Assembly: GCF_001194135.2 (NCBI RefSeq)
Contig: NC_069010.1
Location: 9,440,720-9,504,719, forward strand
Length of the DNA: 64,000 nt
Source: Octopus bimaculoides
Lineage: Eukaryota
Direction of reading: 5' to 3'
The notes below the pieces were generated by a model that worked only from the letters and a program-made list of their open reading frames with translations, was not told the origin of the DNA and searched no databases. A program made the position numbers and the translations under genes. Below, piece after piece: positions 37,913 to 57,327 of this stretch; the first letter of the stretch is position 1; every line of letters begins with the position of its first letter.

Positions 37913-38045
37913 ATGTTTTCAGACGACACAAAACCGCAATTATTGGAGTATATCAGGGACAGCCTTGATCGGAACGTCTTCACTGGACCTTATGGTCAAA
38001 GACAAGGTATACATATGTCTCTTTGTGTGTATATGTATAAATATG

Positions 38046-38101
<56 letters not shown>

Positions 38102-38581
38102 GGATTGTGTAGGGGTATATGTATGTTTGTATGATCGAATCCCCTGCGAGTTAACAAGTTAACTGGGGGTTTTTTGACCCTGAAAGGATCTAAGGAAAAA
38201 TCAACTTGCCGTGTTGGGCGATCTTTCGTTTTTGATTACATTTTACGTCGTTTCTAATCCACGTGCCTTTGTTTATGTTTCCGTAAAAGGGTTTTAGGGT
38301 TAGGGTTACGGTTACGGTTGGGGTTAGGGACGGAATTCCCTAACCCTAACCCTAAAACCCTTTTACGGAAAGCGACGATCTTGTTCAGAATTGTAATCAA
38401 AACGAAAGATCGCCGAATGGATGTCATTTCTCGTTAAAATATGTTTCTGTTTCCTGGTTTTCATCATCATCATCATCATCATCATCATTGTCAACATCGT
38501 TTATAACATTATCTTTCATTGTTGTCAACATCATCACTACCATCATCATCATTGTCCTTGATCATCGTTATCAACACCACC

Positions 38582-38613
<32 letters not shown>

Positions 38614-38708
38614 TTAAATGTGTTCTTTATTTCTCTCTCATTTTTTTTTTCTCCCTTTCAGTTCTCTATTTGGATTACGTTGCATCTGGAAGGTAAGTGA
38701 AAGCACAT

Positions 38709-38745
<37 letters not shown>

Positions 38746-38757
38746 ANNNNNNNNNNT

Positions 38758-38792
<35 letters not shown>

Positions 38793-41700
38793 AATCAGTA
38801 TATTTAAGCACCACCACCACCACCACCACCACCACCACCATCATCATCATCACCGTCATAGTATTCTGAGTTTGTACGGGTCAGATGGAATTTGTTTGAA
38901 GGAGATGTTTTCCACGGCTGGATCCCCTTCTTGTCACCAACCCTCACCTCTTTCCAAGCAAAGTAATGTTTCCACATGGCCAGACATGTTTTTGCGGAAG
39001 ATCGGAAATGAAGGACACCTCTTGCATTACAGTGACTCTTGTTTACAGCTATCATGTGCAGTCAGGACAAGGAGAAACCTACACACACACATGTCCATCT
39101 GTCTATTAGTCTAACTGTCCGTCTATCAACACATACACATACATACACAAGATGCATTCTAGAAGTTGCCTGACTTTTTTTTTAGGGAGAGACATTTATT
39201 CATTTCAAACAAGTACAAAACTCTAATCTTCAACGTAGGGTCCTCTGATTTCAATGCACTTTGTGTTGTGTTCCAGCCCCTTTGTGAAGGCCCTATGGAA
39301 GACCTTCAAAGTGAAAAGGTCCAGGACCCTTGTCACAACCTCCTTCATCAAAAAGGAGTAATACCTGTAATTCAAAGGGGCCAGCCATATCATACTCTGT
39401 GTCATGTTGAATCTCCCTGAGAACTACGTTGGGTGTACACGTGTCTGTGGAGTGCTCAGCCATTTGCATGTTAATTTCACGAGCAAGCTGTTCCATTGAC
39501 CGTATCAGCTGGGACCCTCGTCGTCGTAAGCGACAAAGTGCTCCTTTGCTCTGCCATCCTCAGACCGCTTCTTCCAGTGTTTGTTGTTAGTTTGCTTTTG
39601 TCCCTGTCACCTAGCAGTTCAATAGAAGAGACCAATGAAGTAAGTTATTAAAAGACGATGCCTTCCCTGTTTCATTCCAGAGCTCTGTCTTTCATTGAAG
39701 AATACGTAAGGAATGAAGTGTTACCCGACTATGGAAATACTCACACCACCACCAGCATAACCTCCCTGCAGACCACTTTGTATCGACACGAAGCAAGGTA
39801 AGTCATGGCACCACCGTCTTGGAGAATCAATCTCTTTCTAAATTTCCTGAGATTTGTAGAGCATCGATGAAATGGAAATTATAATTTTTATGGGGTTTTT
39901 TATTATTATTAACGAAGGCATTGTTTTCTTTACATTTTTCATCATCATCATCATTTAATGTCTGTTTTCCATGCTGGTATGGGTTGGCCAGTTTTACAGA
40001 AGCTGGTTAGACAGGAGACTGTGCCAGGCTTCTCTGTCTGTTTTAGCAGGGGTTTTATGGCTGGATGCCCTTTCTTCCTAACACCAACCACATTACAGAG
40101 TGGATTGGGTGCTTTCTATGTGCCACCAGCACCATAGCTACTGATATTTGAGTTGCTTTACCAGTTCCAGTCAAACCATCCAACCCATGCCAGCATGGTC
40201 AACTGCCCCGTGTGCCACCAGTGGTTCATCACAAACTTCACACATCTGCCGTCTCATCAAACCCATGCAGGCATTGAAAAATAGACATAAAACAAAATCA
40301 CAAAACCTATATTACTAATGTGATGTTTGTATTTCTCATTCCAGGGATATCATACGAAATGCTGCTAACGCCAGCGAACATGATGCTGTCATATTTGTGG
40401 GCAGTGGTACCACTGCTGCCGTTCACAAACTCATTTTCTCACTGGACCTTAAGGAACCCCCTGTAAGTCCTTATAACTTTTGTAGAAAATTTTTATTGGT
40501 ATTTTCTATATTTTATTTTGTTAAGCTACTTAATTCCTGACCGCATGGTTCTGGGTTCAGTCCCACTGCATGGCACCTTGGGCAAGTATCTCCTGCTATA
40601 GTCTTGTGAGTGGATTTGGTAGACAGAAATTGGGTGAAAGCCAATCTTATCTTTTATCTTTTATCTTTTACTTGTTTCAGTCATTAGACTGCGGCCATGC
40701 TGGGGCACTGACTCGAAAAAATTTTAGTCGAATGAATCAACCCCAGTACTTCTTTATTTAAGCCTGATACTTATTCTGCAGATCTCTTTTTGCTGAACTG
40801 CTAAGTCACGATGTGTGTGTGTGTCCTTGTGTCAATGTTTGCCCCTTACTGCAGAATAAGTATCAGGCTTAAATAAAGAAGTACTGGGGTTGATTCATTC
40901 CACTCACAAGGCTTTGGTCGGCCTGAGGCTATAGTAGAAGACACTTGACCAAGGTGCCACGCAGTGGGACTGAATCCGGAACCATGTGGCTGGTAAGAAA
41001 GCTACTTACCACACAGCCACTCCTATAGCTATATTTACAGTTTTGTATATTTATTGATTCTCGTTTTTGTTTTCCTTCAAGGTCATCTTTGCGGGACCGT
41101 TTGAGCATCACTCCAATCTTTTACCGTGGAGAGAAATTGGATCAGAGGTAAGTGAGGACAGTCTAAGGACGAGAAGAAGAAGAAGGAAAAGAAAAATACC
41201 TCTTAAAATGGTTTTAAATGTTGGAGTAGAAATTCTTTAGTTACACACATGTCCCTGAAAAGACCTGACCACCCCTCTACTTCTCTCTCTTACTGTATAG
41301 TTATGTCCCTCCTCTATAGCAAGACACCTATTTCTGCCCCCTATTTCTCAGTTACACTCTAACCTTTCATCATTTGATACTGGATCACCTCCTCCAATGT
41401 CCCCTCTGTTGTGGCAAGGCACTGGCTCCTGTCCCTCTGTCACACTCTAACCTTTCATCTTCTGACAAAAGTTCCCCTCCTCAAATGCCCTGCCCTTCTC
41501 ATAATTCCTTGTCTTGTGAGTTACTTGGTGACCCTGCCAGTGCTGGTGCCATGTTAAAAGCATCCAGTTCACACTGTAATGTGGTTGGCATATTTGGAAG
41601 GGCATCCAGCAATAAAAACCCTGCCAAAACAAACACAGAAGCCTCGGGTAGTTTCTAGCTGGCTCCTGTCAACTGCCCTACCCAGGCATACATGGAAAAT

Positions 41701-41912
41701 GGACGTTAAATGATATATATTTGTATATTTATGTATTTATGAAGTTCTCTGGTATGTGAGTGTGAAATCTTCATCTTCTTCTGTTCTTAGGTGATACAAA
41801 TCAAGACAAACAGCCATGGCTCTGTTGATATTGGCGATTTGGAGAGGAACCTTCAGGTAAGCAATCGGCTCCAGAATTTCCATCCTTACCACTTTCTCTC
41901 CCTCTCAACAAT

Positions 41913-41961
<49 letters not shown>

Positions 41962-44900
41962 CTCTTAATCTCCCTCTTCTCTCTCTCTCTCCACATCAAT
42001 ACACACACACACACACACACACACTATCTCTCTCTCTCCCTCCAACAATATTCACACTCTCTCTACCTCTTTACAATACACTCCCTCTCTATCTCTCTCT
42101 CTCTACCAATACACACTTTCTCTCTCTCTCTCACTCCATCAATATTCTCCACCCTATCTCCTTCACTAATACTCTCTCTCTCGCTCTCTCTACCATTTTC
42201 AGGAATTCTCGACCAAGAACTGTCAAATGATTGGCTCTTTCAGCGCTGCTTCCAATATCACTGGCGTCCTCACCAACGCCGACGCAGTATCTGCCTGTCT
42301 CCACAGATATGGGGCTTTGGCGTTCTGGGATTATGCCACAGCTGCCCCCTACCTCACCATCGACATGAATCCAGTTGTCCCTGGGTATGTAACAATCCAT
42401 GCCACACATCATCATCATCACAAGCTGGCAGAATTGTTAGCATGCTGGACGAAATGCTTAGCAGTATTTTCCTTGACGCTACATTCCAAGTTCAAATTCC
42501 ACCGATTTCATCTTTGCTGACCAACTCCTGTCAAACCATCCAACTTATGCCAGCATGGAAATAAATGTTAGATGATGATGATGTTGATATTAGATGTAAA
42601 TTAACACACACATTGAATTTCCATTTTACACACACACATATATATACACATATATGTAATTAATAAATTCAATAATGGGATAAAAATCTTTTACAAGAAT
42701 TTTATCAGGAAGCTAGTGTGTAAAAAATTCATAAGGCAAATTTCTATTCCCAAGAATATAATTATTCGTTTATATTTATATAAGGGCATTACTACAGAAT
42801 AAAGCCACACACTAGACTTCCCAAATAAACACATTTTATTACCGATAATGTGTTTATTTGGGAAGTCTAGTGTGTGGCATTATTCTGTAGTAATGCCTTA
42901 TATAAATATAAATACACATATATGTATGTAGAATAGATTATAAAATGCTTAAGTAAGCATTCTATAGATAGTCACCAAGATCCTGTTCTTTGTCTCTCTG
43001 GGTTTCCTGTCTTTCTCAATGGTTCTGTCTTTGATTTCTTTCAGACCAGATCAGCGCTATGTCTATAAAGATGCAGTTTATTTCTCACCACATAAGTTCG
43101 TTGGAGGCATTTCTACCCCAGGTGGGTATTGATTAACTTGGTTGTGTGGTGGGAGAGGCATGTGTGTTTTTTATGAATATATATATTTAGAGGCGCTGGA
43201 GTGGCTGTGTGGTAAGTAGCTTGCTTACCAACCACATGGTTCCAAGTTCAGTCCCACTGTGTGGCACCTTGGGCAAGTGTCTTCTACTATAGCCTCGGGT
43301 TGACCAAAGCTTTGTGAGTGGATTTGGCAGACGGAAACTGTATATATATATATATATATACAGTCTGAGGAGTTAGGTGGCCAGATGTTGGCAGTGATGT
43401 GGTCACAGAAATTGTCTCATGGCCATGACTGGGTTCTCTTTGTGTGATATGGTGCAGAGTCCTGTTGCCAGACATGGGTTCTTTCAGCAGCCACCCTCTT
43501 CACCCAGGGCAGCACTACCTCCTCCAGGCACTTGATGTAGCTCTCTGCATGAAGTGTCAAGCCATGTGGGAAGATGAACGGAGGCATAATGTGGCCATCA
43601 CTAGTGATTACCCCAAACACCATGATGTGGACTGGATGTTTGATTTTTATCACTTTCAGTACATGTCCTCAGATTGACACCCAAACACTCTGAAATGTTC
43701 ATATTTGACCTTCTGGCGTGAATGCCAGGCAGTGCAGCATATGTCCGAATTTCTGGTTGAGTGAATTGCGTCATGGTGCTGTTTTTCTCACACCCAAAAG
43801 TAAAAATATAAAATGGTAACAATTTACCTGTCGCACCCTGTTTATAAAAAGAAAGTATGTCTGTATATAATCCTTTGTTTCTTTCTGTACCCTTTTTTAT
43901 TTATTTCATTTTGTAATCCCATAAACCCTTATTTCTGTAACTGTTCACTGCCAGGAATTCTCATTGCCAAGAAGTACCTCTTCAAGAACTCAACTCCAGA
44001 AGGCTGTGGTGGAGGCACAATATTCTTCGTGAGTATCCTCCTTGGCATGTCTTGAGATGTATGAGTGGAACTGCTTACTCGTGTGCCAGTGGTTGCTCAT
44101 GCATCACGGTTTGTGTGAGTGTGTGTGTGTGTGTATATATATTATTTTGTGTTTGTGATTTTAACTTTTTGTGTTTTTCTTTCTGTTCCTTACTGTTCAC
44201 CTCACTCTACCAACGTTTAAAATATAACAGGTGCGTCGAGAGAACCACCGTTTTCTACACGAACCAGAAATGAGAGAAGAAGGTGGAACTCCTGATATTG
44301 TCGGTTCCATTCGTGCCGGTTTGGTGATGCAGCTGAAGCTGGCTATTGGCACTGATGTCGTTGCACAGAGAGATCAACAACTTCTTAAGTAAGACTTTCA
44401 ACTCTCCCAACACCAAAATAATTTTGTTGTTGTATTTTTATTAATTATTTACCAAAAATCATGTTGGGATGGTGACATTTGGAAAGCTCTTCATCATAGG
44501 TCTACTGGATCAGGGCTGACCTGGGGTTAAACAACAATTTAGGAAGGATACTTTAAATAACCTAATCTTACATTTGACTGGTTGAAATAGCAACTAAATC
44601 TCCCTCAAAGTGCTTTTAGCAATCTTATAACAGTGAAGGCTACATTAGGTCATGTAGTCCTAGATACACTATGCTTGATTAAAAGACACAAACACACACG
44701 TAAATATCTGTTACTTGTTTCATTCATTAGACTGTGGCCATGCTGGGGCACTACTTTGAAGAATTTTTAATTTGAATGAATTGACCACAGTGTTTATTGT
44801 TTTTTTTTTAAGACTGTTACTTATTCTATCAGTCTCTTTTGCTGAACCACTAAGTTATGGGGATGTAAACACACCAACACCAGTTGTCAAGCGGTGGTGG

Positions 44901-47900
44901 GGGACAAACACAGACACAAAGACACACACACATACACATATATGACAGGCTTCTTTCAGTTTCCATCAACCAAGTCCAATGACAAAATTTTGGTCAGCCT
45001 GAGACTGTTGTACAAGACACTTGCCCAAGGTGCCATATAGTGGGACTGAACCCAGAACCACATGGTTGCTAAGTAAGCTTCTTACCCACACGGCCATGCT
45101 GCACCACTTGTCTGGCTTTGCTGGTTTTTGTGTGAATGTTTTTCTTTTTTTGTATTTCAGAAAAGCCACCGACTGCTGGAAGAAATGCAAGAATTTGGTA
45201 ATTTTAGGGACCCAATCTGTCCCCTCATTACCAATATATTCCTTCCTTATTTATCACCCGCAGACTGGCCGATTCCTCCATCACAATTACGTCACGGCAC
45301 TGCTTAATGATGTCTTTGGGATCCAATCAAGAGGGGGCTGTGCTTGCGCTGGTCCTTATGCTGAAGTGAGCCCCTTCTTTTTTTACTTAATACATATTTA
45401 TGTGTGTGTGTGTGTATGTNNNNNNNNNNNNNNNNNNNNNNNNNNNNNNNNNNNNNNNNNNNNNNNNNNNNNNNNNNNNNNNNNNNNNNNNNNNNNNNNN
45501 NNNNNNNNNNNNNNNNNNNNNNNNNNNNNNNNNNNNNNNNNNNNNNNNNNNNNNNNNNNNNNNNNNNNNNNNNNNNNNNNNNNNNNNNNNNNNNNNNNNN
45601 NNNNNNNNNNNNNNNNNNNNNNNNNNNNNNNNNNNNNNNNNNNNNNNNNNNNNNNNNNNNNNNNNNNNNNNNNNNNNNNNNNNNNNNNNNNNNNNNNNNN
45701 NNNNNNNNNNNNNNNNNNNNNNNNNNNNNNNNNNNNNNNNNNNNNNNNNNNNNNNNNNNNNNNNNNNNNNNNNNNNNNNNNNNNNNNNNNNNNNNNNNNN
45801 NNNNNNNNNNNNNNNNNNNNNNNNNNNNNNNNNNNNNNNNNNNNNNNNNNNNNNNNNNNNNNNNNNNNNNNNNNNNNNNNNNNNNNNNNNNNNNNNNNNN
45901 NNNNNNNNNNNNNNNNNNNNNNNNNNNNNNNNNNNNNNNNNNNNNNNNNNNNNNNNNNNNNNNNNNNNNNNNNNNNNNNNNNNNNNNNNNNNNNNNNNNN
46001 NNNNNNNNNNNNNNNNNNNNNNNNNNNNNNNNNNNNNNNNNNNNATATATATATATATATATACATATATATATGTAGGTGCAGGTGTGGCCAGAAGCTT
46101 CATGCAGTAGTGATACGATGAAGTAGTTGTATGCTGTCAACTTAATGTGACAGTCCCCTGAAGGGAATAATACTACTGTTGGTTAGACCTAGGAAGCTGC
46201 ACCGCTTCCTGTCAGCCTTGACACAGTTCCTGTGTCCTTATGTTTACAAGGGGGAGACAAGCACCTCCACCCAGCCAAGCCTGCATCCAGAGACATGTTT
46301 TTGAGTCTTTGTTATTTTTCTTAAATGTTTGTTATTTTGTTATTTTTCTTAAACGTTTCTTTGAAGGATCTGTTAGGAATATCAGAAGAGAAAGCAAAGG
46401 AATTTGAAAATGTTCTCACTGAAGACAGGTTGGTAGATCGTCCTCTATATCAGTGGTTCTCAATTGGTGGGGGGGGGGATCCATNNNNNNNNNNAGTGGT
46501 TCTCAATTGGTGGGGGGGGGGATCCATGTGACCCTTATTTTGTTGTTAAAATTTATCTGTAATAAATAAGCGATATTTCTACAAATTGCAGAATATTTAA
46601 CTATTTTTGTTTTTCTACAGTTCTTAATAATATTTAATTCTAAAACGGCAGAAAGATTTTTTTAAGCATTAAATGGCTATGAGGGTCCACTTGGAGTCCT
46701 TGGTTAAAAATGGTCGAGTACCATTGCTCTACATGCATATTACCTTTCCACCTATAATCCTCTATATACACAACTATACACCATCTTACATCTTATACAC
46801 AATCCTCTATATTCATTACCATACACCATTGTACATTTTATATGCACTCCCTATATAGTCCTCTATACACAATATATATATTGTTCATCTCATTATGCTT
46901 TCTCTTCCAGCCGTCTTGACCGAGTACATTTGAAACGATACCGGGAGTATTCACCAATGGAAATCCTCAGGTGAGTCACCCGAACACTCCTCAGTCGAGT
47001 CATCAGGATGAAATGAGCTCAAGGATACATGTAGAGTAGCAGTTCCTGTCCTAGGGTTGGCAGATAGCCTAAGATCCCACAAATGGGATTGGGATTAGAA
47101 TGTTGCAGAATCAACAAAATTGATTCTCCAGGCAGAGCCTGAAGCGTCAGAATAACTAAAAGTAGACCAAAATTGAAATGGTTGGATAATATCCAGAGTT
47201 TTCAGGGATTCTCTCCAAGTCGAGCAACTTCTTTTGTGCATTGAGAGATTACAGGAATATCACAAGATGGATTCTTCAAGCCAAGCCAGCCAGCAGCAGA
47301 CTTGGTGGTAGACCAAAATATTTGGATAAGATCCATCGTCTCAGTGGATCACACTTGGGAATCCAACTGGAAAATGTAATGATGGATGCTTCTGATAGGA
47401 CCCTAGAGAAGAGGAGGGGTCTGACCCTCCCAGGAATTGTGGGTGGAAAAGATGGAACAATCCTTGACCAATTCTAATGTTTTCCTCAAATTTTCGTCAT
47501 CTTCTTCCACCATTTTTCTTTGCAGACCAGGATTCACCCGGCTAAATTTACCATTCTTTGTTGACAATGAAACTTTGGATTTTGTCATCCAAGCTGTAGA
47601 GTTGGTTGCAGAATTTGGTTGGCATCTGCTTCCTCAGGTAAAGATTGAGTCAATTTTAATAGGTTTCAAACAGTGGAATAGCCCTGTCTTTCTCTCCCCC
47701 CCCTCTCTCTCTTAGAAGACATCATCATCATCTTAATATTCACTTAACATTCCGAGCTCTCAGATGTTGGATGGTATTTGTGGAGGTGGAGTTTCTACAG
47801 CTGGATGCCTTTCCTGTTGCTAACCCTCACCTGTTGCCAAGCAAGCTAACATTTCCCCAGAGTTAGACATAATTTTCATGGAAGACTGGCAAAAAAATAA

Positions 47901-48159
47901 AAAGACACTGCTTGCATAACAGTGAAACTCATTTACAGCTGCCATATGATGTCAAGGGAAGCAGGGAGTAACATTAATATCATCAACATTTACTGCTTCA
48001 TATCAAGTCATTTATTATTCTGTGTTATTCCAAAATAGAAAAGAAAGAAATCTTTATCATAAAAATGTTTTAAGTGTTTTTCCTCATGAATTCTTCTTCC
48101 TTATTTTACAGTACAGGTTCAATCCGGAGACTGGAGAATGGAGACACAAGGATCTTCAG
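37913..48159 (+). CDS. N-terminal module of the fusion: PLP-dependent cysteine desulfurase, SufS/CsdA-like (group II)
   Basis: [50 protein letters not shown] (PLP lysine codon 43094-43096), CGGGT, EEGGTP and [10 protein letters not shown] (putative catalytic Cys codon 45345-45347). Confidence 0.87.
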
Positions 48160-48164
48160 GTTAC

Positions 48165-48229
<65 letters not shown>

Positions 48230-49589: not shown

Positions 49590-49620
<31 letters not shown>

Positions 49621-51168
49621 GACATACACACACACACATACAGCTTTTTAATTTATCTTTGCAGATGAAAATATCACTTCCCGATCAGAGTCTACTCTTT
49701 GAGAATGGCACCCAGCATCTGAGGTGGTTCCTGCTGCCGTGTGAAGCTTACACCTGTATCTCTGAAGGGACTTTCACAAACTTCATCTCGTTAGATGCTC
49801 TACCGTTTGTTCCAAAATCTTTTGCAAACGCCAACCGACAGGAAGAAAGTTCCGATCTCACCGTGGTCGCGGGAAATAACAGAAAAGATGGTGTTGGAGA
49901 AGAAGGAGATGGAGGGAGAGGAGATGGAAAACCGGGAGACCAAGAAGTGGAAGAAGAAATAGAAGTTAAGCAAGAATGTGAAGAAGAAGAAAGTGGTACC
50001 AACAAAATTGCTGCAAGTGTGCCACAGGTGGCAGCACAAAATGCGATTCATGAGAGTTCTTTATGTGACACTGGTATGAGCCATAGTGAAGAGTTCTGTA
50101 AATCGATTAAGAATTTCCTGGAGAGGGGATTTTCGTTTGGTCATTGTGATGATCTGTCGGTCAGTTTTGACAAAACATTGGTCTTGTCTGAGAGTGGACA
50201 TGGATCTGACAATTTGGACGTTAATCCTACCTGCACTCCAGTTGGTACTACTCTCGATGCTGCTTTTAATCCTCTTAATCCATATCTCTATCCAAATCCA
50301 GTTACAAATTCTCATCTTTCTGATGCTACTAATGTTAGTCCTAATCTTAAGTTATATCATGATCCTGGTCTTAGCTTAAATCCTAATCCTAATCCTGATC
50401 CTAATCTTAACACTAGCCATAACCCTAACCTTAATTTAAATCCTAATCCTAATTTTAATCCCAGTGTTAACCCTATTCATAATCCCAATCATAACTCTAA
50501 TCCGAGTTTTAACAACTCTAATCTTAATCGTAATCACACGCCCAGTTATAATTTTAATCCTAATCGCCAAATCTCTAGCTTCGAAAATTACAAACTGAAG
50601 TCCTCATCGAAGTTCCAGAGATCGACAACAACAACAACAGCAGCAATGACCGCAGAGGGGAGGGGAAAAGAGGAGGAGGAGGAGAAAGGGGTGGCTAATG
50701 TGAACAGTTCCTTTCCGAGCAATCGGGACGAAAGAGAGGAGAGTTGCAATGAAACTCCAGAAGGGGTGATGGATAAAACTGGAGTGGGAGTTAACAGTGT
50801 TGGACTTGCAGTAACGCAGCGCAGTGGCTGTTGTCATTGCAGTAACAACAATAATGCAGGACATGGTGCAACACAGTGCAGTTGTCACGGCAACGATAAT
50901 GATACAAATAAGGAATGTAGGGACTGCTGTTGCAGGTCCCTTAGTGAAACTACAACCTTGACGAAACCGTCGATGACACCACTGTCTGAAAAGGGACCGG
51001 ATGTCACTGCTACTGGGGCTGCGGGTTCTAAGGCAGAGCCACAGATGACCCAGTGTTGTCTGCGCAAAGCAAAGTTGAAGACTGACCAGCGGAAAGTGAC
51101 CAAGAAGGGCAATTTGTGGGTTTCACCACCGAAAGAGTTGTTCACTCCAGTCATTGAGGTAAGTAGAA

Positions 51169-51216
<48 letters not shown>

Positions 51217-54200
51217 ATATATAAATATATATATATATTCATATATCAATGTATACATCCAGATATATAAATACATATGTGTGTGTGTGTCTATATAACT
51301 TCATATTTTTGATATGAATACATTTCTAACCACATGGTTCCGGGATCAGTCCCACTGCTTGGCACCTTGGGCAAGTATCTTCTACTACAGCCTCGGGCTG
51401 ACCAAAGCCTTGTGAATGGATTTGGTAGACACAGTCATCATCATTTAATGTCTGAGTGTGGAACCAGCCCTTAGCCACTGTTGTTCTTAGGTCTTCTCTG
51501 ACTCAGAGTAGTAACACCTGTCAGGTTAGCAGCTGTGGGTTAATTAATGTGTTTTGGAAGCAGTTCAAATGCTCAAACCCTTGTTGTGTGTCCCCTGGGA
51601 AAGGAGAAGTTTCGCGGAATCAACGTCGACAGCAAATTAAAAAGTGGAGTTCCTCGAGTGGTCCAGTGCCCTATTTGACACCTGTCTGAGAACTCTAGGG
51701 TAGATGTAGCTCTCCAGCCCAGAAAGGCAATTCTTCTACAAGAAGACCACACCAGTTTAAAGCCTACAGCTTGCTGGTCACTGCAGCCGTCTTAGACCAC
51801 CAAGCCATTGTGGTCAGACCTTCAGATTTAAAGAGTCTGACAGGATTGTATTCATTGACTCTCACTTTANNNNNNNNNNAAAGAGTCTGACAGGATTGTA
51901 TTCATTGACTCTCACTTTAAAGCTACTAAACACAGGCAGGAACAAAAGCCCTGCAACATGAAGGACCATTTTTACATAGCTACATGAAGCCATGTTGCTC
52001 TTTCCTCATGGTCTTCAGATACGAAGGACCTGCCCTCATCATACCCCCCACCACACTGTTCTTTTACTGTAATATGTATGTATTTCTATCTCTATTGCTC
52101 CAGGCTATTGCAGACTACAATATGATACAAGATGGGGATCGAATATTGTTGTGCCTTTCTGGGGGTAAAGATTCCCTCTCCATGTTGCATATTCTTCATC
52201 AATATCAGTTCTATGCTAAAAGCAAGGTAAAATCCTATTTTATTATTATCATTGTTACTACCACTACTAGCACCAAAACCTCTTCCATCTTCTCTTACTC
52301 TTTAGAAATTCCCTCCCACATCTTTTCGCCATTTTAAAATTTTTTAGAAAAATATTTTTCTCCTTATTCATTTTTATTTTAGGGAACTCGCTTTGATATT
52401 GGTGCTGTGACAGTTGATCCCCAGACCCCTTCTTATAATCCCAGTCCTTTGAAGAAATATCTAAGCTGTTTGGGTGTCCCATATTTCTTTGAATCTCAAG
52501 GTTTGTATTACAAACATACTTGTATTTATGTTTTTTTTTAATGTTATTATTGTTGTTATTCCTTGAACCCTTTCGAGGGATGCTGTCCTGTACTTGGCTC
52601 TTAGAGTACAAGGCATACAAGTGAATACAAGCAACAGGGTGTTAACCCCTTTGGTTAAGGCGCAGGAGTGGCTGTGTGGTAAGTAGCTTGCTGACCAACC
52701 ACATGGTTCCGGGTTCATTCCCACTGCGTGGTACCTTGGGCAAGTGTCTTCTACTATAGCCTAGGGCCGAGCAATGCCTTGTGAGTGGATTTGGTAGACG
52801 GAAACTGAAAGAAGCTCGTCATATATAAATATATATATATATATAATGTGTATGGAGGTCAAACACGTCTGAAACCCATTTGGANNNNNNNNNNAACCCA
52901 TTTGGACGGATCGAAATGATTGTCCATTCTGTTGGCGCATTCCTTACTACAATATTTTGGTGATAAAAAGGCAGTCAGCTGGCAGAAAGGTTAGCACACC
53001 GGGCGAAATGCTTAGTGGTATTTCGTCTGTCTTTACGTTCTGAGTTCAAATTCCGCCGAGATGGACTTTGCCTTTCATCCTTCCGGGGTCGATAAATTAA
53101 GTACCAGTTCCGTACTGAGGTTGATGTAATCGACTGCTCTCCCCTACTCCAAAATTTCGGGCCTTGTGCTTCGAGAAGAAAACATTTTCGTGATAAAAAT
53201 AGCAGTTCTTACGAAGTTACTTCCCTTCAATTGTGTGTTACCAAAATTTCCTCCTTTGAATCCAGTTGGGATTTTCTTCTCTGGCGTTGAGAATCGTTTA
53301 CCTTTTGCTGGTTTTCAATCGTTAGACTGCGGCCATGCTGCTGCATCGTCTTGAAGAATTTTACTCCAATGTATCGACCCCAGTCACGGTGATGTAAACA
53401 CACCAACATTGATTCTCAAGCATTGGTGGGACACACACACATAGGCGCTCGTGCACACACACAGCAAGTTTCTTTCAGTTTCCATCTACCAAATCCACTC
53501 AAGGCATTGATTGGCCCATGGCTATAGTAGAAGACACTTGCCCAAGGTGCCATGCAGCGGGACTGAACCCAGAACCATGTGGTTGAGAAGGAAGCTGCTG
53601 ACCACACAGCCACGTCTGCGCCTACACAGTTAATGCATAATTAATTAAAAACAGTGTAAATTATTAAATAAGCATTAGACTCGAGAGAGTAACCTGCATA
53701 TTAAATGGTAAAATTCTTCAGATTTCTTTGCAAATATATATTTTCTTTGAGTAATTTTCTGTTAAAACCTAGCTTCAGCTTGTAAAGTGGCCAAAGTAGC
53801 CCCTCCCACCAAATAATTTGCCCCTTGGTTACATCTTTCCTCTTCCTCACTACAAAGAAATATTTAACCCATTAGCATTTAAACCGGCCATATCCAGCCG
53901 AAAGTATTCTGCTTGTTTTATGTTCAAACTGGCCAAATCTGGTCTCTCACACCAACCCTACAATATCGTTTTAAAAATTAACAGCTACCTCATCAAAATC
54001 TCATAGCTACGAGATAATGCATGATTAGTTCAAAACAATGTGGATGAAAAAGCATTAATTTTGGTAGAATAATGCAGACACTAAAGGGTTAAAGAAGTTT
54101 GTCTGACAGCCTCCTCAGTTGCTAAAATGGCGAAGGCGCTGCTCTGGACGATGGCAGGGGAGATACCATTCTTGTTTAGCATTAGGTCAGTCATGACCAA

Positions 54201-54648
54201 CCTGTGTTTTATTCAGACATAGTGTATCTTGGACTAAATTATCTAATGTGTCCTCCTTTGTTGTAATTTAGCCCCTGGTCATTCCTGATTTAGTAGACAC
54301 CTGTGAACAAAGTATTCCAGGTGTGACCATTCCATTTTTTATACAGATATAGTATACCGAGGACTTGTGACAAAAATTTGAAATAATAATAATAATGATT
54401 ATAATAATGATAATTATTATTAGTGTTAAGGCTATGAACTGGCAGATTTGTTAGCATTCTGGGTGAAATGCTTTGCGGTATTTTGTCTGTCTTTATGTTC
54501 TGAGTTCAAGTTCTGTCAAGGGTCAGCTTTGCCTTTCATGCTTTAAGGAGTTGATAAAGTCGAGTATAGGGGTCAATGTAATCAACTTAGTCCCTCCCCC
54601 AAAATTGTTTGCCTTGTACCAAAATTTGAAATTATTGATATTATTGTT

Positions 54649-54692
<44 letters not shown>

Positions 54693-56346
54693 TTACTTCC
54701 AGGTATAATGGACACAGCCTCCAACCTCCCGTACAAATGTGAGTCGATTTGCAGCTTCTGTAGTCGTATGAAGCGGGGACGTATCTATATGTGTGCCCGG
54801 CGAGAGGGCTACAATGTTGTGTCCCTGGGACAACACTTGGACGACCTCGCTGAAAGGTAAAGTTTCAAACTGACAGTCCTTCATTGTATTTCCCACCACC
54901 ATCCTCCTCCTCCTCATCATCATCATCGCTATTGCCCATGTTGTCATCATCAACATCATCACCATCATTACCACCACCACCACCACCACCATTATCTACA
55001 TCAACTGTTTTGCATTAGCCATATTACAGTGGTCCATGCATTATAAAGCCACACAACTTATATCTTCTATAGTTACACTGTATATTGCAAAATGTGACTC
55101 CTATCTATGTTTTCTACATTACAATCTCTGTATTTCAAAATGTGACCCCCACATATCTGTCTTTTCTAGTTACACTCTCTGTATTACAAAATGTGACCCC
55201 CATATATCTGTCTTCTACATTACAGTCTCTGCATTACAAAATACGACCCCCCCCCCACATATCTGTCTTTTCTAGTTACAGTCTCTGTATTACAAAATGT
55301 GACCCCCACATAACTATGTCCTCCACAAGTTAAATAATATTCTATGTTCTTTAAATCTTTCTCTCTTCTCTTTTACAGTTTCCTTATGTCTTTCTTCCAC
55401 AATGGAATCATGAGGACCATGAAGGCTCATTACACAGTTCAGTGAGTACAATACAATCTCCTGCCTTTGGTGTTTCTTTGTGTGTGTGTGTGTGTATAAA
55501 TATATGTATATTAATTTTTAAGTCAAGTAATATTTAAAAACAATTTTACACTAAACTGAAGAATTACTCAATACTTTTTGTAGAGTAAATATTTATACTT
55601 CTTCCAGAAGAGTGGTGATGATAGTGACTTCGCAGTTTCATCCTGCTAGCTTTTATCAGCTAACCGGCCGAAACTTTGAAGTTTCTGTGGACATTAAATG
55701 ATAGTGATGATGATAGTATAATTCTGGTCTTGCAGGGATAACGACCTCCGAGTTATTCGACCTTTGGTTTATGTCAGAGAAAAGAACTTACGAAGGTTTG
55801 CTGAAAAGGTAAAAACTAGAGAACATCCCTCTTTCAGTACATCTATTTGTCTGTTTGTCTATTTGTCTGTTTGTCTATTTGTCTGTTTGTCTATTTGTCT
55901 CTCCATTTATATATAGGTCAGACTATTTCTGTCTGTTTCTACAGCTGGATGCCCTTCCTAATTCCAGCCACTCTGAGAGTGTAGGGGCTGCTTTTTATGT
56001 GCCTCCAGCACACTGGTTGTCAAGTAGTGATGGGGGGGGGACAAACACAGACACATTCACTCCCTCTCCATACAAACACACCCTCACACCCCCTCTCATA
56101 CACACACACACCCTCACACCGACACACACAATGAACTGCTTCCAGGTTCCATCTGCCCTAAACCCACTCACAAGGCCCTTCATTGGTTTAGGGCTGTATT
56201 AAAGATGCTTGCCCAAGGTGCCACACGGTGGGATTGAACCTGAAACCATGCAAGCTTCTTACCACACAGCCATACCTGCCCCTATATTTACTTTACATAT
56301 GCTCTTTGCCAGCATCTCCAGTGACATCATGTGACCGACCATGTGA

Positions 56347-56384
<38 letters not shown>

Positions 56385-57327
56385 GAATCAACTTCCTGTC
56401 ATCAGTGAGAATTGTCCAGCCTGTTTCGAAGCACCAAAGGTAAGATGGTGGTCACAGAATTGAGGGTGGGAGGTGTTTTTTTTTCTTTTTAGCACAATGT
56501 ATCTAGGATTACATTATCCAATGTGTGTTGCTAGGTTTTACCAGGTTCATGGTGAAAAATTATAATAAATTATAATAAATTATAATAAATTAGGTTGGGG
56601 CTGCAGGTGTTATCTGTTATCTTGTTACTTGTTTCAGTCGTTAGACTGTGGCCATGCTGGGGTACAGCCTTCACGAATTTCAATCGAATGAATCAAGCCC
56701 AGGACTTATTTTTGGTTTTTAAACCTGGCACTATCAATCTCTTTAGCCAAACTGCTATGTTATGGGGATGTAAACACACCAACAGCGGTTTTCATGTGAT
56801 GGTGGGGGACAAACGCAGATACAAAGACACACACACGGTAGGGTTCTTTCAGAGCATATACACTCGAATCGTGTGGTCCATTCATGGCACTTGATTTATA
56901 ACTCAGAGATGTGAGTTCAAATCCTAGGTCTCAGTACATGTGTATTTTGCTTTTTATTTTTTGCTGTTATTTCTAAAAGGCCTTACCTCCATGTAGAGCA
57001 AGGATGGGTAACCTTCTTTAAGATGTGGGCCACAGGAGATGTGGTTCTTCAGGCCACACTATTGTAGAAGTTTCCCCTGTGTTGTTGCTGTCTCCTCTGT
57101 CGTATAGATAGTGTCGTGTTAATGTCTTGCGACTTTTATTGCAGGAACGTCACCGAATGAAACAACTGTTGGCAGCACAAGAACTCCTCTTCCCGAAGAT
57201 CTACAACAGCATGAGGTCTGCAATGACACCTATTATGGCTATCAACAAAACTGGCTTTAGTTCCAAGGAGCTGTTTGGAGTGATGCACAGACAGGAAAAT
57301 GGTGATGAAGAAGAAGACGATGATTGA
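37913..57327 (+). CDS. Fusion protein: class V aminotransferase (group II cysteine desulfurase-like) + long linker + TtcA-like tRNA 2-thiocytidine sulfurtransferase; ~1,290 aa, 25 coding exons
   Basis: GT-AG exons with consistent phases: 37913-38006, 38662-38692, 39681-39797, 40345-40462, 41082-41147, 41791-41856, 42203-42384, 43045-43121, 43955-44028, 44231-44388, 45161-45365, 46367-46428, 46911-46970, 47526-47637, 48112-48159, (gap)48741-48809, 49071-49115, 49665-51158, 52104-52226, 52383-52500, 54703-54856, 55379-55441, 55736-55808, 56386-56439, 57145-57327 (TGA). The visible CDS totals 3,846 nt. Confidence 0.88.
43358..43840 (-). mobile_element. Tc1/mariner-superfamily transposase fragment with one terminus, in intron 8 of the fusion gene
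   Basis: The - strand frame [39 protein letters not shown] has a DDE-type second Asp motif. The terminus is CAGGGTGCGACAGGTAAATTGTTACCATTT at 43840. Confidence 0.75.
46451..46726. mobile_element. hAT-type MITE (contains a small gap-associated duplication)
   Basis: TIRs CAGTGGTTCTCAA / GGTCGAGTACCATTG with an 8-bp TSD CTCTATAT/CTCTACAT. Related fragments lie at ~1920-2030 and ~6690-6775. Confidence 0.75.
51100..57327 (+). CDS. ttcA: C-terminal module of the fusion: TtcA-like PP-loop tRNA sulfurtransferase
   Basis: [25 protein letters not shown] (E. coli TtcA as I recall it: [25 protein letters not shown]), [28 protein letters not shown] and NCPAC. This gives a PP-loop plus two CxxC motifs. 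Confidence 0.85.
53868..54088 (+). mobile_element. Intact piggyBac-like MITE
   Basis: TTAA-CCCATTAG...CTAAAGGG-TTAA, 221 bp. Confidence 0.85.
55075..55310. repeat. Minisatellite, ~5 copies of ~45-48 bp
   Basis: TGTATTACAAAATGTGACCCC(C)ACATATCTGTCTTTTCTAGTTACA.TCTC repeated in intron 21. Confidence 0.85.

What the first reader, a model, noticed from the sequence alone, without database searches (positions are those of the whole stretch)
37913..57327. Animal gene fusing a cysteine desulfurase to a TtcA-type tRNA thiolase: a candidate one-protein sulfur relay
Seen in sequence: 25 phase-compatible GT-AG exons join an intact desulfurase (SPHK, RGGCACA) to an intact TtcA domain (SGGKDS, CSFC, CPAC) in one frame. 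The ORF track misses this because most exons are 31-205 nt. Established: bacterial TtcA makes s2C32 in tRNA using a [4Fe-4S] cluster and depends on a separate desulfurase (IscS) for sulfur. The known eukaryotic cytosolic tRNA thiolation route (NFS1-MOCS3-URM1-CTU1/CTU2) makes s2U34 instead. Inference: this fusion may mobilise sulfur from cysteine and install it on RNA (or build its own cluster) without NFS1/URM1, implying an uncharacterised animal thiolation pathway. The 24 spliceosomal introns argue against bacterial contamination. I cannot tell whether similar architectures are already auto-annotated elsewhere, and I know of no functional study.
Basis: partly seen in the sequence, partly recalled or inferred. 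Interest (0 to 1): 0.92.

Follow-up and report, generated by a model that had tools for sequence, protein, structure and literature searches.

The report
Octopus desulfurase–TtcA fusion gene, already described
This octopus gene really does encode one protein joining a cysteine-desulfurase-like enzyme to a bacterial-type tRNA cytidine-thiolating enzyme, but the fusion is already annotated in hundreds of eukaryotes and a September 2026 preprint links it to the first 2-thiocytidine found in an animal tRNA; its function is still untested.

Summary
Window 37913-57327 (+) is Octopus bimaculoides LOC106878996. It has 25 exons and encodes about 1294 aa: an N-terminal class-V PLP enzyme, a long low-complexity linker, and a C-terminal TtcA-type PP-loop domain.

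- **One mRNA.** Two RNA contigs from different studies (4148 and 4178 nt) carry the whole ORF, and raw RNA-seq reads cross the critical junctions. The two-gene alternative is refuted.
- **Gaps.** Five of the six assembly gaps are intronic. Gap 48455-48739 hides the first 38 nt of exon 16, so the NCBI model lacks 14 aa.
- **Not new.** A bioRxiv preprint (28 Sep 2026) reports s2C32 in Aplysia tRNA-Lys and describes the orthologous "CsdA-TtcA" fusion across molluscs.

What I add:
- The desulfurase is SufS/CsdA type II, not IscS-like. The SufS catalytic Cys aligns with the second Cys of the invariant GGCAC motif.
- The fusion is not animal-specific. It occurs from sponges to tunicates and throughout stramenopiles, sometimes with an added thioredoxin domain.
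- Bacteria hold standalone homologues of the desulfurase module. In the 80 loci examined these sit next to Lrp/AsnC regulators, with no ttcA within 5 kb.

Independence from NFS1 is unproven and unlikely for cluster assembly. No enzymology or genetics exists.

The parts
37913..38006 (+). Exon 1 (ATG at 37913; 94 nt)
   Evidence: Donor GT. X8 contig positions 1-143 = 37864-38006, so there are 49 nt of 5'UTR. An in-frame stop lies 51 nt upstream.
38662..38692 (+). Exon 2 (31 nt; LYLDYVASG)
   Evidence: AG/GT. Contig arithmetic.
39681..39797 (+). Exon 3 (117 nt; YGNTHTTTS motif)
   Evidence: AG/GT. This motif was one of the two patterns that retrieved bacterial homologues.
40345..40462 (+). Exon 4 (118 nt)
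   Evidence: AG/GT.
41082..41147 (+). Exon 5 (66 nt; FEHHSN at 41100-41117, His129/His130)
   Evidence: AG/GT. Both His are invariant in 36 orthologues and align with EHHAN of SufS.
41791..41856 (+). Exon 6 (66 nt)
   Evidence: AG/GT.
42203..42384 (+). Exon 7 (182 nt)
   Evidence: AG/GT. Its words are present in RNA and DNA runs of the organism.
43045..43121 (+). Exon 8 (77 nt; SPHK 43085-43096, PLP-binding Lys242 codon 43094-43096)
   Evidence: AG/GT. S239/H241/K242 are invariant and align with SGHK of SufS.
43955..44028 (+). Exon 9 (74 nt)
   Evidence: AG/GT.
44231..44388 (+). Exon 10 (158 nt)
   Evidence: AG/GT.
45161..45365 (+). Exon 11 (205 nt; [10 protein letters not shown] 45330-45359; Cys388 codon 45339-45341, Cys390 codon 45345-45347)
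   Evidence: AG/GT. R385, G387, C388, C390, A391, G392, P393 and Y394 are invariant. Cys390 aligns with the catalytic Cys of SufS, RaGhhCAqP.
46367..46428 (+). Exon 12 (62 nt)
   Evidence: Joint 46428>46911 GT..AG in raw reads and two contigs. The loose end before 46367 reads ...GCTGGTCCTTATGCTGAA, which is the end of exon 11.
46911..46970 (+). Exon 13 (60 nt; [20 protein letters not shown])
   Evidence: Joints 46428>46911 and 46970>47526. Present in XP_014783863.1.
47526..47637 (+). Exon 14 (112 nt)
   Evidence: Joints 46970>47526 and 47637>48112.
48112..48159 (+). Exon 15 (48 nt; end of the SufS-like core, ...GEWRHKDLQ)
   Evidence: Joint 47637>48112. The loose end behind it reads GTACAAAGACAGAAAATGGCTTGGCAATAT.
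48740..48809 (+). Visible 70 nt of exon 16 (108 nt in the mRNA). Its first 38 nt and its acceptor lie in gap 48455-48739.
   Evidence: X8 contig positions 1520-1557 have no counterpart in the window, and 1558-1627 = 48740-48809. 15+7 raw reads join 48809 to exon 17. The hidden part encodes VYKDRKWLGNI.., which is conserved in orthologues.
49071..49115 (+). Exon 17 (45 nt; [15 protein letters not shown])
   Evidence: The loose end at 48810 reads AGTGTTTAAGAGAAGCG. The loose end before 49663 reads AAGCGAAAGACTTGTTCAAGACTGCTGAAA.
49665..51158 (+). Exon 18 (1494 nt). It encodes three things in turn: the last part of the desulfurase module ([10 protein letters not shown] 49719-49748; LPFVPKSF 49800-49823); a low-complexity linker of about 425 aa; and the first residues of the TtcA module ([14 protein letters not shown] 51102-51143).
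   Evidence: One open exon, contiguous in both RNA contigs. RWF..P.EA closes the protein in the closest bacterial standalone homologues and is invariant or nearly so in eukaryotes. The fusion point therefore lies inside this exon.
52104..52226 (+). Exon 19 (123 nt; PP-loop SGGKDS 52158-52175)
   Evidence: 15+10 raw reads and 2 contigs run from 51158 into CTATTGCAGACTACAATATGATACAAGATG, which is the sequence at 52105 onward. SGGKDS is invariant.
52383..52500 (+). Exon 20 (118 nt)
   Evidence: AG/GT. Contig arithmetic 3167-3751 = 585 nt = exons 19-24.
54703..54856 (+). Exon 21 (154 nt; CSFC 54750-54761 = Cys1122/Cys1125)
   Evidence: AG/GT. It aligns with the cluster ligands Cys130/Cys133 of TtuA and with E. 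coli TtcA Cys122/Cys125 (PMC4081106). It is nearly invariant among the animals, where the one exception is a Phytophthora gene model lacking this part, and invariant in alignment A3.
55379..55441 (+). Exon 22 (63 nt)
   Evidence: AG/GT.
55736..55808 (+). Exon 23 (73 nt)
   Evidence: AG/GT.
56386..56439 (+). Exon 24 (54 nt; CPAC 56413-56424 = Cys1212/Cys1215)
   Evidence: AG/GT. Both Cys are invariant. The second corresponds to E. coli TtcA Cys222, the third cluster ligand.
57145..57327 (+). Exon 25 coding part (stop TGA 57325-57327). The 3'UTR continues to at least 57571.
   Evidence: The loose end before 57143 reads AGAATTGTCCAGCCTGTTTCGAAGCACCAA, which is exon 24. X8 contig positions 3750-4178 = 57143-57571.

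Best explanation
LOC106878996 of Octopus bimaculoides encodes one polypeptide of about 1294 aa that most likely acts as a self-supplying tRNA cytidine-32 2-thiolase. It is the octopus orthologue of the CsdA-TtcA fusion recently described in Aplysia.

Proposed mechanism:
1. The N-terminal module (residues 1 to about 575) is a type-II, SufS/CsdA-like PLP enzyme. It binds L-cysteine on PLP-Lys242 and transfers the sulfur to Cys390 as a persulfide.
2. The C-terminal TtcA-type module holds a [4Fe-4S] cluster on Cys1122, Cys1125 and Cys1215. It uses ATP at its PP-loop (SGGKDS) to adenylate C32 of cytosolic tRNA.
3. The mobilised sulfur is captured on the cluster's free iron and replaces the activated O2, giving s2C32.
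4. The variable, low-complexity linker (about 90 aa in Oscarella sponges, about 500 aa in octopus) only tethers the two modules.

Shown here: gene structure, a single mRNA, orthology, conservation of every catalytic residue, and the fold.

Shown by others: the TtcA chemistry in E. coli, and s2C32 in Aplysia tRNA-Lys.

Inferred: desulfurase activity, sulfur hand-over in cis, the tRNA target in octopus, and cytosolic location.

The [4Fe-4S] cluster itself is probably still delivered by the normal cytosolic Fe-S assembly route. The pathway would then bypass MOCS3/URM1 but probably not NFS1 altogether.
For: - **One mRNA.** Contigs of 4148 and 4178 nt from two studies span from 49 nt upstream of the ATG to 244 nt past the stop. 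Raw reads cross 48809>49071 and 51158>52104, and the contigs also cross 49115>49665.
- **Orthology.** XP_014783863.1 is 98% identical with 100% coverage. Aplysia LOC101861551 is among the best hits.
- **Desulfurase module.** The best NCBIfam hit is the SufS family (E=3e-33). PDB hits are all SufS/CsdA/Nfs2. The SufS catalytic Cys aligns with Cys390. The AlphaFold model of the compact Oscarella orthologue (pLDDT 84, pTM 0.71) matches SufS-type structures at target-normalised TM 0.83-0.89. K242, H129/H130, R385, C388 and C390 are invariant.
- **TtcA module.** NCBIfam TtcA scores 216.6 bits over profile positions 22-272 of 295, against 51 bits for TtuA and 32 for NcsA. The PP-loop is invariant in both alignments. 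The three ligand Cys are invariant in A3; in A1 CPAC is invariant and CSFC nearly so. The E. coli ligands are C122, C125 and C222, and E. coli TtcA needs a cysteine desulfurase, ATP and DTT in vitro (PMC4081106).
- **Cluster role.** In related thiolases the fourth iron of the cluster binds the sulfur species (PMC10067955).
- **Selection for the fusion.** It is kept from sponges to tunicates and in stramenopiles, with linkers as short as about 90 aa. Some environmental eukaryotic versions add a C-terminal thioredoxin domain, which fits persulfide chemistry needing a reductant.
- **Product in a mollusc.** s2C32 was detected in Aplysia tRNA-Lys-UUU.
Against: - No enzyme assay, mutant or knock-down exists for any member.
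- Both domains score below the curated NCBIfam cut-offs: TtcA 216.6 against 272, SufS 115 against 475. Neither is a certified equivalog.
- In the 80 loci examined, the bacterial homologues of the desulfurase module have no ttcA within 5 kb. 78 of the 80 have a divergent Lrp/AsnC-type regulator alongside. That context suggests amino-acid metabolism rather than RNA thiolation, so the module's ancestral substrate is unknown.
- SufS has GHHCA where this family has GGCAC.
- According to the preprint, s2C was not reported in the squid tRNA-Lys sequenced earlier. There are no tRNA data for octopus.
- The tool gives no inter-domain error estimate or coordinates, so I could not test docking of Cys390 onto the cluster site.
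Confidence: 0.62

Rival explanations
1. Two adjacent genes, a desulfurase and a TtcA with its own promoter and the ATG at 49665, have been wrongly joined. Alternatively the join is an artefact of the gapped assembly.
For: Exon 18 begins with ATG. Six gaps lie in the locus. The linker is low-complexity.
Against: - Single RNA contigs from two studies cover the whole ORF.
- Raw reads and contigs cross every junction examined, and no cluster of read starts was seen in 49645-51160.
- Exon 18 itself encodes the conserved end of the desulfurase module and the start of the TtcA module.
- Intron-free transcript contigs from many other species carry both domains.
Confidence: 0.01
2. The desulfurase module does not donate the sulfur that ends up in RNA. 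It builds or repairs the oxygen-labile [4Fe-4S] cluster of its own TtcA module, and the transferred sulfur comes from elsewhere.
For: The E. coli TtcA cluster is oxygen-sensitive and decays to [2Fe-2S]. IscS plus cysteine is used both to reconstitute the cluster and as sulfur source in the assay (PMC4081106).
Against: No scaffold (IscU/SufU/SufE-like) domain was detected in the protein. Type-II desulfurases normally hand sulfur to a partner rather than assemble clusters alone, which is general knowledge and was not tested here. This reading is not exclusive of the main explanation.
Confidence: 0.14
3. The PLP module is not a cysteine desulfurase. It may be a selenocysteine lyase, a cysteine-sulfinate desulfinase or another beta/gamma-lyase. 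The fusion would then couple TtcA to a different metabolite, or be regulatory.
For: - The score is far below every curated desulfurase cut-off, and selenocysteine lyase SclA also hits.
- GGCAC replaces GHHCA.
- 78 of the 80 bacterial loci examined have a divergent Lrp/AsnC amino-acid-type regulator alongside, and none has sulfur-relay genes among the conserved neighbours.
Against: - The PLP Lys, the His pair, the substrate Arg and the active-site Cys are all invariant.
- All the best structural matches listed (top 50) are SufS-type desulfurases or selenocysteine lyases.
- The fusion partner needs exactly the product of a desulfurase.
Confidence: 0.1
4. The TtcA-type module modifies something other than C32 of cytosolic tRNA: another position, another nucleoside, an organellar tRNA or a non-tRNA substrate.
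For: The score is below the TtcA equivalog cut-off. Eukaryotic members have an extra conserved Cys upstream (C-x3-CSFC) and an N-terminal W..PPK..F motif absent from my recollection of E. coli TtcA. There is no direct link between the gene and s2C32.
Against: TtcA is by far the best family match, over nearly the full profile. s2C32 occurs in a mollusc that has this gene, and the preprint's blastp with E. coli TtcA reports only this protein. In most orthologues the N-terminus carries a conserved G.RKFY motif rather than a variable presequence, which argues against organellar targeting. That is inference.
Confidence: 0.08
5. The polypeptide is cleaved in the linker, so the two enzymes act as separate proteins. 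The fusion would only ensure co-expression, as the preprint suggests as one option.
For: The linker is long, poorly conserved and low-complexity in octopus. The preprint raises this possibility.
Against: In the Oscarella sponges only about 90 residues separate the end of the desulfurase module from the PP-loop. The model has only a short low-confidence segment of 19 residues there, with pTM 0.71. The fusion is kept across more than a billion years of divergence (general knowledge for animals versus stramenopiles).
Confidence: 0.05

Closest known systems
Aplysia californica LOC101861551, the 'IscS/CsdA-TtcA' fusion (bioRxiv 10.64898/2026.09.27.754811, 28 Sep 2026)
   Same: - Orthologue: among the top hits of the octopus protein, about 56% identical in the aligned parts.
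- Same domain order, same SPHK, GGCAC, SGGKDS, CSFC and CPAC motifs, and a variable linker.
- The preprint's alignment of 28 mollusc species includes Cephalopoda.
   Different: - The octopus linker is longer (about 500 aa between the RWF motif and the PP-loop) and full of Asn-Pro repeats.
- Cephalopod proteins lack the N-terminal G.RKFY segment.
- The preprint calls the domain IscS-like and could not place the catalytic Cys. Here it is SufS-type with Cys390.
- The preprint did not look outside animals.
Escherichia coli / Salmonella TtcA, tRNA-cytidine(32) 2-sulfurtransferase (PMC4081106)
   Same: PP-loop, three [4Fe-4S] Cys ligands, and a match over nearly the full length of the family profile.
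   Different: Bacterial TtcA is a standalone protein of about 300 aa that receives sulfur from a separate IscS. The octopus domain scores below the equivalog cut-off and is the C-terminal quarter of a 1294-aa protein.
SufS / CsdA / plastid Nfs2, type-II cysteine desulfurases (e.g. PDB 8d8s, 4q75, 1kmk)
   Same: Fold (target-normalised TM 0.83-0.89), PLP Lys, His pair, Arg, and an active-site Cys on the short loop.
   Different: - Only about 20% identity.
- GGCAC in place of GHHCA.
- An extra conserved C-terminal extension of about 100 aa that ends in LRWF.LP.E.
- No SufE, SufU or CsdE partner identified.
Bacterial standalone homologues of the desulfurase module (Limnocylindrales, Polyangiales, Actinomycetota, Rhodobacterales, Deinococcus; loci L001-L080)
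   Same: 38-49% identical over the whole module, with the GCACAGPY motif. The closest ones have the same C-terminal extension ending in LRWFPLP.E.
   Different: Not fused to TtcA, and none of the 80 loci has ttcA within 5 kb. 78 of the 80 have a divergent Lrp/AsnC regulator alongside. Function unknown.
NFS1-MOCS3-URM1-CTU1/CTU2 cytosolic s2U34 pathway
   Same: CTU1 is a related [4Fe-4S] PP-loop thiolase (PMC10067955). Both act on the anticodon loop.
   Different: It has a different target (U34), and sulfur arrives through a ubiquitin-like thiocarboxylate relay. The octopus domain scores 32 bits on NcsA against 216.6 bits on TtcA.
ThiI (s4U8 synthase), a PP-loop enzyme with a fused rhodanese persulfide carrier
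   Same: An analogy for a sulfur-carrying domain fused in cis to a PP-loop thiolase. ThiI-SSH is mentioned in PMC4081106; the domain fusion is my own knowledge.
   Different: ThiI carries sulfur but still needs IscS to mobilise it. Here the mobilising enzyme itself is fused.

Membership tests
CsdA-TtcA fusion family (Aplysia LOC101861551 type) | Aminotran_5 and PP-loop (ATP_bind_3) domains in one ORF, in that order | tested here: met
   Pfam on the joined protein: residues 34-395 and 1017-1186. Same in Aplysia and Oscarella.
CsdA-TtcA fusion family (Aplysia LOC101861551 type) | Both domains on a single mature mRNA | tested here: met
   4148- and 4178-nt RNA contigs and junction-spanning raw reads.
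CsdA-TtcA fusion family (Aplysia LOC101861551 type) | Orthology to the described Aplysia protein | tested here: met
   P0014/P0132 = XP_005111426.3 is the 14th-best hit, 1167 bits.
TtcA (tRNA-cytidine(32) 2-sulfurtransferase) | PP-loop SGGxDS | tested here: met
   SGGKDS at 52158-52175, invariant in 36-39 orthologues.
TtcA (tRNA-cytidine(32) 2-sulfurtransferase) | Three Cys ligands of the [4Fe-4S] cluster (E. coli C122, C125, C222) | tested here: met
   CSFC and CPAC are conserved. CSFC aligns with the TtuA ligands. Ligand identity comes from PMC4081106. Cluster binding itself was not tested.
TtcA (tRNA-cytidine(32) 2-sulfurtransferase) | Score above the curated equivalog cut-off (NCBIfam NF007972, 272 bits) | tested here: not met
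   216.6 bits over profile positions 22-272 of 295. It is still the best family by more than 150 bits. I therefore call it TtcA-type, not a certified equivalog.
TtcA (tRNA-cytidine(32) 2-sulfurtransferase) | Forms s2C32 in tRNA | not testable with these tools
   Indirect only: s2C32 in Aplysia tRNA-Lys-UUU.
Type-II cysteine desulfurase (SufS/CsdA) | PLP-binding Lys in S-x-H-K, and the His before it in E-H-H | tested here: met
   SPHK and FEHHSN, invariant and aligned to SufS.
Type-II cysteine desulfurase (SufS/CsdA) | Catalytic Cys on the short loop R-x-G-x-x-C-A-x-P | tested here: met
   RGGCAC390AGP aligns with RAGHHCAQP of S. aureus SufS (8d8s). It is invariant.
Type-II cysteine desulfurase (SufS/CsdA) | SufS fold | tested here: met
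   Foldseek against the PDB: the 50 best matches listed are all SufS-type desulfurases or selenocysteine lyases, target-normalised TM 0.83-0.89. The model is of the Oscarella orthologue, pLDDT 84.
Type-II cysteine desulfurase (SufS/CsdA) | Score above curated family cut-offs (SufS 475 bits, CsdA 494-607 bits) | tested here: not met
   115 and 57 bits. This is a separate, unnamed subfamily.
Type-II cysteine desulfurase (SufS/CsdA) | Cysteine to alanine plus enzyme persulfide activity; dedicated acceptor protein | not testable with these tools
No SufE/SufU-like domain was found by Pfam.
Type-I cysteine desulfurase (IscS/NFS1), the preprint's label | IscS-family profile match and the long flexible Cys loop | tested here: not met
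   The IscS subfamily profile gives E=3e-4, 19.8 bits, over residues 33-220 only. The preprint itself could not find the IscS Cys328 equivalent.
CTU1/Ncs6/NcsA s2U34 thiolases | Best profile match to NcsA/Ncs6 | tested here: not met
   NcsA 32 bits against TtcA 216.6 bits.

The most novel reading that the evidence does not exclude
The fusion is an ancient, eukaryote-wide (animals plus stramenopiles) self-contained cytosolic sulfur-mobilising RNA thiolase. A SufS-type desulfurase, recruited from a bacterial Lrp-regulated enzyme family of unknown function, would hand persulfide sulfur directly to the [4Fe-4S] cluster of its own TtcA domain, independently of the MOCS3-URM1 relay. That would make it the first dedicated extramitochondrial cysteine desulfurase for RNA modification in animals. 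It would have been overlooked because it did not appear in any vertebrate, fly, nematode, fungus or plant among the best hits of three searches.
Probability: 0.4. Interest if true: 0.7.

Novelty: already known. Interest (0 to 1): 0.45.

Why it matters
s2C32 was thought to be confined to bacteria and archaea. If this protein makes it, many invertebrates carry an anticodon-loop modification and a cytosolic sulfur-mobilising enzyme that the standard model organisms apparently lack. The carriers include Ciona, Nematostella, Daphnia, ticks and hemipteran pests. All oomycete plant and animal pathogens carry it too.

The fusion also gives a natural one-protein system for studying how a desulfurase feeds a [4Fe-4S]-dependent thiolase. 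With separate bacterial proteins that step is still unclear.

For this scan the practical result is narrower.

Tried and rejected
- I switched to short repeat-free stretches and used loose ends and contig coordinates instead.
- **My first gene model.** It missed exon 13 (46911-46970) and placed the end of exon 16 one base too far. Both were corrected against XP_014783863.1 and the reads.
- **An apparent 66-nt intron inside exon 11.** Rejected, because read-through gives the conserved LVILG...LPIYSF segment.
- **Bacterial operon origin.** I tested whether the fusion derives from a bacterial desulfurase-ttcA operon. tblastn of the TtcA domain against 80 bacterial loci (±5 kb) found nothing.
- **Vertebrate, Drosophila, nematode, fungal or plant members.** None appeared in the top 120 of three searches. 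Lists are capped at 120, so absence is not proven. The preprint mentions bird hits that I could not check.
- **tRNA scan of the window.** None found.
- **Bacterial promoter/terminator scan of intron 17.** Uninformative for a eukaryote.
- **Pfam on the ORF at 33051-33545.** No hit.
- **Inter-domain docking.** The structure tool gives no inter-domain error estimate or coordinates, so docking could not be assessed beyond pTM 0.71.

Full report
**What is there.** Starting from stop-free stretches and splice-site inspection, I built a gene model. I then corrected it against the best database hit and against RNA reads. The final model has 25 exons from 37913 to 57327 and a 3885-nt CDS encoding 1294 aa. 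All readable splice sites are GT-AG. Pfam finds Aminotran_5 (residues 34-395, E=7e-34) and the PP-loop family ATP_bind_3 (1017-1186, E=4e-11) in the joined protein.

**Identity.** The protein is Octopus bimaculoides XP_014783863.1, "uncharacterized protein LOC106878996", at 98% identity and 100% coverage. The differences were two faults of mine and one of the NCBI model. I had missed exon 13 (46911-46970). I had also placed the exon 16 donor one base too far. The NCBI model lacks 14 residues that lie in an assembly gap.

**Gaps, tested first.** Two RNA contigs from different studies, 4148 nt in run X5 and 4178 nt in run X8, lie on the locus. In X8 the anchors are:
- positions 1-143 = 37864-38006
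- position 1238 = 46367
- position 1673 = 49665
- position 3166 = 51158
- position 3752 = 57145
- position 4178 = 57571.

The intervals between anchors equal the summed lengths of exons 2-11 (1094 nt) and exons 19-24 (585 nt). Gaps 38747-38756, 45420-46044, 51870-51879 and 52885-52894 are therefore purely intronic. Orthologues are also collinear across those points. Gap 46485-46494 is intronic too. It is flanked by the same 32 nt on both sides, which marks an unmerged overlap, and the joint 46428>46911 is seen in reads.

Gap 48455-48739 is the exception. X8 positions 1520-1557 (38 nt) have no counterpart in the window. The reads leaving exon 15 continue GTGTACAAAGACAGAAAATGGCTTGGCAATAT, which encodes VYKDRKWLGNI. 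This is the conserved VYKDRKWLGNISY segment of other cephalopods and of animals generally. Exon 16 is thus 108 nt, of which 70 nt (48740-48809) are visible. The frame is preserved.

**One gene or two.**
- Raw RNA-seq reads of two 2026 runs cross 48809>49071 (15 and 7 reads) and 51158>52104 (15 and 10 reads).
- Both contigs also cross 49115>49665. Four further loose-end rows of that call were not displayed.
- No cluster of read starts was reported in 49645-51160.
- The 1494-nt exon 18 begins with the conserved end of the desulfurase module (LPDQ..LLF....LRWFLLPxEA....PFxP). It ends with the conserved start of the TtcA module (W..PPK.IF.P), with no stop between.
- In the closest bacterial homologues of the desulfurase, the protein ends a few residues after LRWFPLPxE.

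The fusion point therefore lies inside a single exon. The two-gene reading is refuted.

**The N-terminal module.** The preprint discussed below calls it IscS-like and could not find the catalytic cysteine.
- In NCBIfam the best match is the SufS family (E=3e-33), followed by an encapsulin cargo desulfurase, SufS, CsdA and selenocysteine lyase. IscS-type profiles are marginal at E=3e-4.
- All PDB sequence matches are SufS, CsdA or plastid Nfs2.
- In the alignment to S. aureus SufS, the PLP lysine (SGHK) falls on SPHK, EHHAN falls on FEHHSN, and the catalytic loop RAGHHCAQP falls on RGGCACAGP. The catalytic Cys therefore corresponds to Cys390, the second Cys of GGCAC.
- K242, H129, H130, R385, C388 and C390 are invariant in 36 animal sequences. 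They are also invariant in 39 sequences that include stramenopiles.
- An AlphaFold2 model of the compact Oscarella orthologue (898 aa; pLDDT 84.2, pTM 0.71; only residues 617-635 are disordered between the modules) matches SufS-type structures with target-normalised TM 0.83-0.89.
- All scores are far below the curated cut-offs. This is a distinct, unnamed subfamily of type-II-like enzymes. Its activity is inferred, not shown.

**The C-terminal module.** The best NCBIfam family is TtcA: 216.6 bits over profile positions 22-272 of 295, against a cut-off of 272. TilS-N scores 57 bits, TtuA 51 and NcsA 32. The PP-loop SGGKDS is invariant in both alignments. CPAC is also invariant in both. CSFC is invariant in A3 and nearly so in A1, where the one exception is a Phytophthora gene model lacking that part. 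[quoted passage not shown] No TtcA structure is in the PDB by sequence; the nearest is TtuA.

**Prior knowledge.** A full-text search found one directly relevant paper. It is bioRxiv 10.64898/2026.09.27.754811, dated 28 Sep 2026.
- It reports s2C at position 32 of Aplysia californica tRNA-Lys-UUU, described as the first s2C in a eukaryote.
- It identifies LOC101861551 (1177 aa) as a "CsdA/IscS-TtcA" fusion and notes RNA-seq continuity.
- It aligns homologues from 28 mollusc species, including Cephalopoda, and mentions unshown hits in birds and insects.
- It proposes that the fusion is dedicated to s2C synthesis.

That Aplysia protein is among the top hits of the octopus protein.

1. The module is SufS-type, and Cys390 is assigned as the catalytic Cys, as set out above.
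2. Distribution in animals. The top 120 hits of the octopus query all carry both Pfam domains except one mis-modelled Phytophthora entry. They cover sponges, Trichoplax, cnidarians, molluscs, annelids, nemerteans, brachiopods, chelicerates, crustaceans, hemimetabolous insects, tardigrades, echinoderms, hemichordates, amphioxus and tunicates. Many come from intron-free transcript contigs. A tunicate query adds Ciona, Daphnia, Sycon and a springtail.
3. Distribution outside animals. A Phytophthora query shows the same fusion in all the oomycete genera listed, in the brown alga Pylaiella, in Chrysoparadoxa, in the labyrinthulids Hondaea and Mucochytrium, and in many environmental eukaryotic transcripts. 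The fusion is therefore not an animal invention. No vertebrate, dipteran, nematode, fungus or plant appeared, but the lists are capped at 120, so absence is not proven.
4. Two environmental clusters (12 and 10 member sequences) append a thioredoxin-like domain after the TtcA domain. This fits a persulfide step that needs a reductant.
5. Linker length. The distance from the RWF motif to the PP-loop ranges from 89 aa in Oscarella to 567 aa in Periplaneta, and is 497 aa in octopus. The long Asn-Pro-rich, acidic and Cys-rich octopus linker is lineage-specific padding.
6. Bacterial relatives. At least 554 loci encode standalone homologues of the desulfurase module, 38-49% identical over its full length. 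None of the 80 retrieved has ttcA within 5 kb. In 78 of the 80, a divergent Lrp/AsnC-type regulator sits alongside. This weakens any claim that the module evolved for tRNA thiolation and leaves its native substrate open.

**Mechanism and its limits.** The most likely working is a tethered sulfur relay. PLP-dependent desulfuration of cysteine would place a persulfide on Cys390. The sulfur would pass to the free iron of the TtcA [4Fe-4S] cluster. ATP-dependent adenylation of C32 would follow, then substitution to give s2C32.
- Shown here: the gene, the mRNA, the residues and the fold.
- Shown by others: the bacterial chemistry, and the presence of s2C32 in one mollusc.
- Inferred: everything that links the two.

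The cluster itself must be assembled, and from general knowledge cytosolic clusters depend on the CIA pathway and mitochondrial NFS1. Bypass of MOCS3/URM1 is plausible. Most orthologues have a conserved N-terminal motif rather than a variable presequence, and the Aplysia substrate is a cytosolic tRNA. The cytosol is therefore the likely location, by inference.

**Verdict.** Interest is moderate: the biology is real and testable, but the novelty now lies in experiments, not in the sequence.

Noticed in passing
window 48455-48739 (gap) and 48740-48809: The NCBI model XP_014783863.1 joins ...HKDLQ directly to SGAMKY... and so lacks 14 residues (VYKDRKWLGNxxxS). Their codons sit in the assembly gap, but the mRNA contigs contain them.
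   Followed up: yes
window 46453-46484 and 46495-46526: The 10-N gap at 46485-46494 is flanked by the same 32-nt sequence (AGTGGTTCTCAATTGGTGGGGGGGGGGATCCAT) on both sides. This is an unmerged contig overlap rather than missing sequence.
   Followed up: partly
window 37614-37666: A segment of about 50 nt, roughly 250 nt upstream of the gene's ATG, attracts thousands of RNA reads at 95-99% identity and hundreds of contigs (word depth up to about 6x10^5). It is a copy of a very abundant transcribed repeat, not part of this mRNA, which starts near 37864.
   Followed up: no
window 170-1186, 4662-5762, 9232-10977 (+): Three long ORFs encode tandem C2H2 zinc-finger arrays. Pfam zf-H2C2_2 gives E=2e-92 for the second one. 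This looks like a local cluster of ZNF genes upstream of the fusion gene.
   Followed up: partly
window 33051-33545 (-): A 164-aa ORF on the opposite strand, about 4.4 kb upstream and head-to-head with the fusion gene, reads like the first coding exon of another gene. From memory, ...NGGVFIKVGQHIGSLDYLLPKEY... resembles ABC1/ADCK-type kinases, but Pfam gave no hit.
   Followed up: partly
loci L001-L080 (bacterial genome contigs), about 100-700 nt upstream of the match, opposite strand: 78 of the 80 bacterial loci encoding a homologue of the desulfurase module have a divergently transcribed Lrp/AsnC-type regulator next to it (Pfam AsnC_trans_reg E=5e-18). None has ttcA within 5 kb. The family's bacterial role is unknown and looks like amino-acid metabolism.
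   Followed up: partly
proteins P0200 and P0203 (environmental eukaryotic contigs, JGI/ENA): Triple fusions with the order Aminotran_5, PP-loop, then a C-terminal Thioredoxin_8 domain (E about 1e-23). There are 12 and 10 member sequences.
   Followed up: partly
protein P0104 (Phytophthora cactorum KAF1795533.1, 1995 aa): This model contains two desulfurase modules (two RWFVYP.EA motifs) and a TtcA domain lacking its CSFC part. It is probably two tandem genes merged with an exon missed. A normal 1057-aa version (P0140) exists in the same species.
   Followed up: partly
window 50374 and 50730 (exon 18): G>A differences in RNA reads of one or the other run. At 50730, 12 of 16 reads in X20 show it. 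The contigs of two other runs show the reference base. These are probably polymorphisms in the linker and are not A-to-G editing.
   Followed up: no
proteins P0121-P0127 (Octopus sinensis / O. vulgaris LOC115226226): Annotated isoforms of 955-1288 aa exist for the orthologue in sister species. I did not examine which parts they lack, or whether a TtcA-less or desulfurase-less isoform is real.
   Followed up: no
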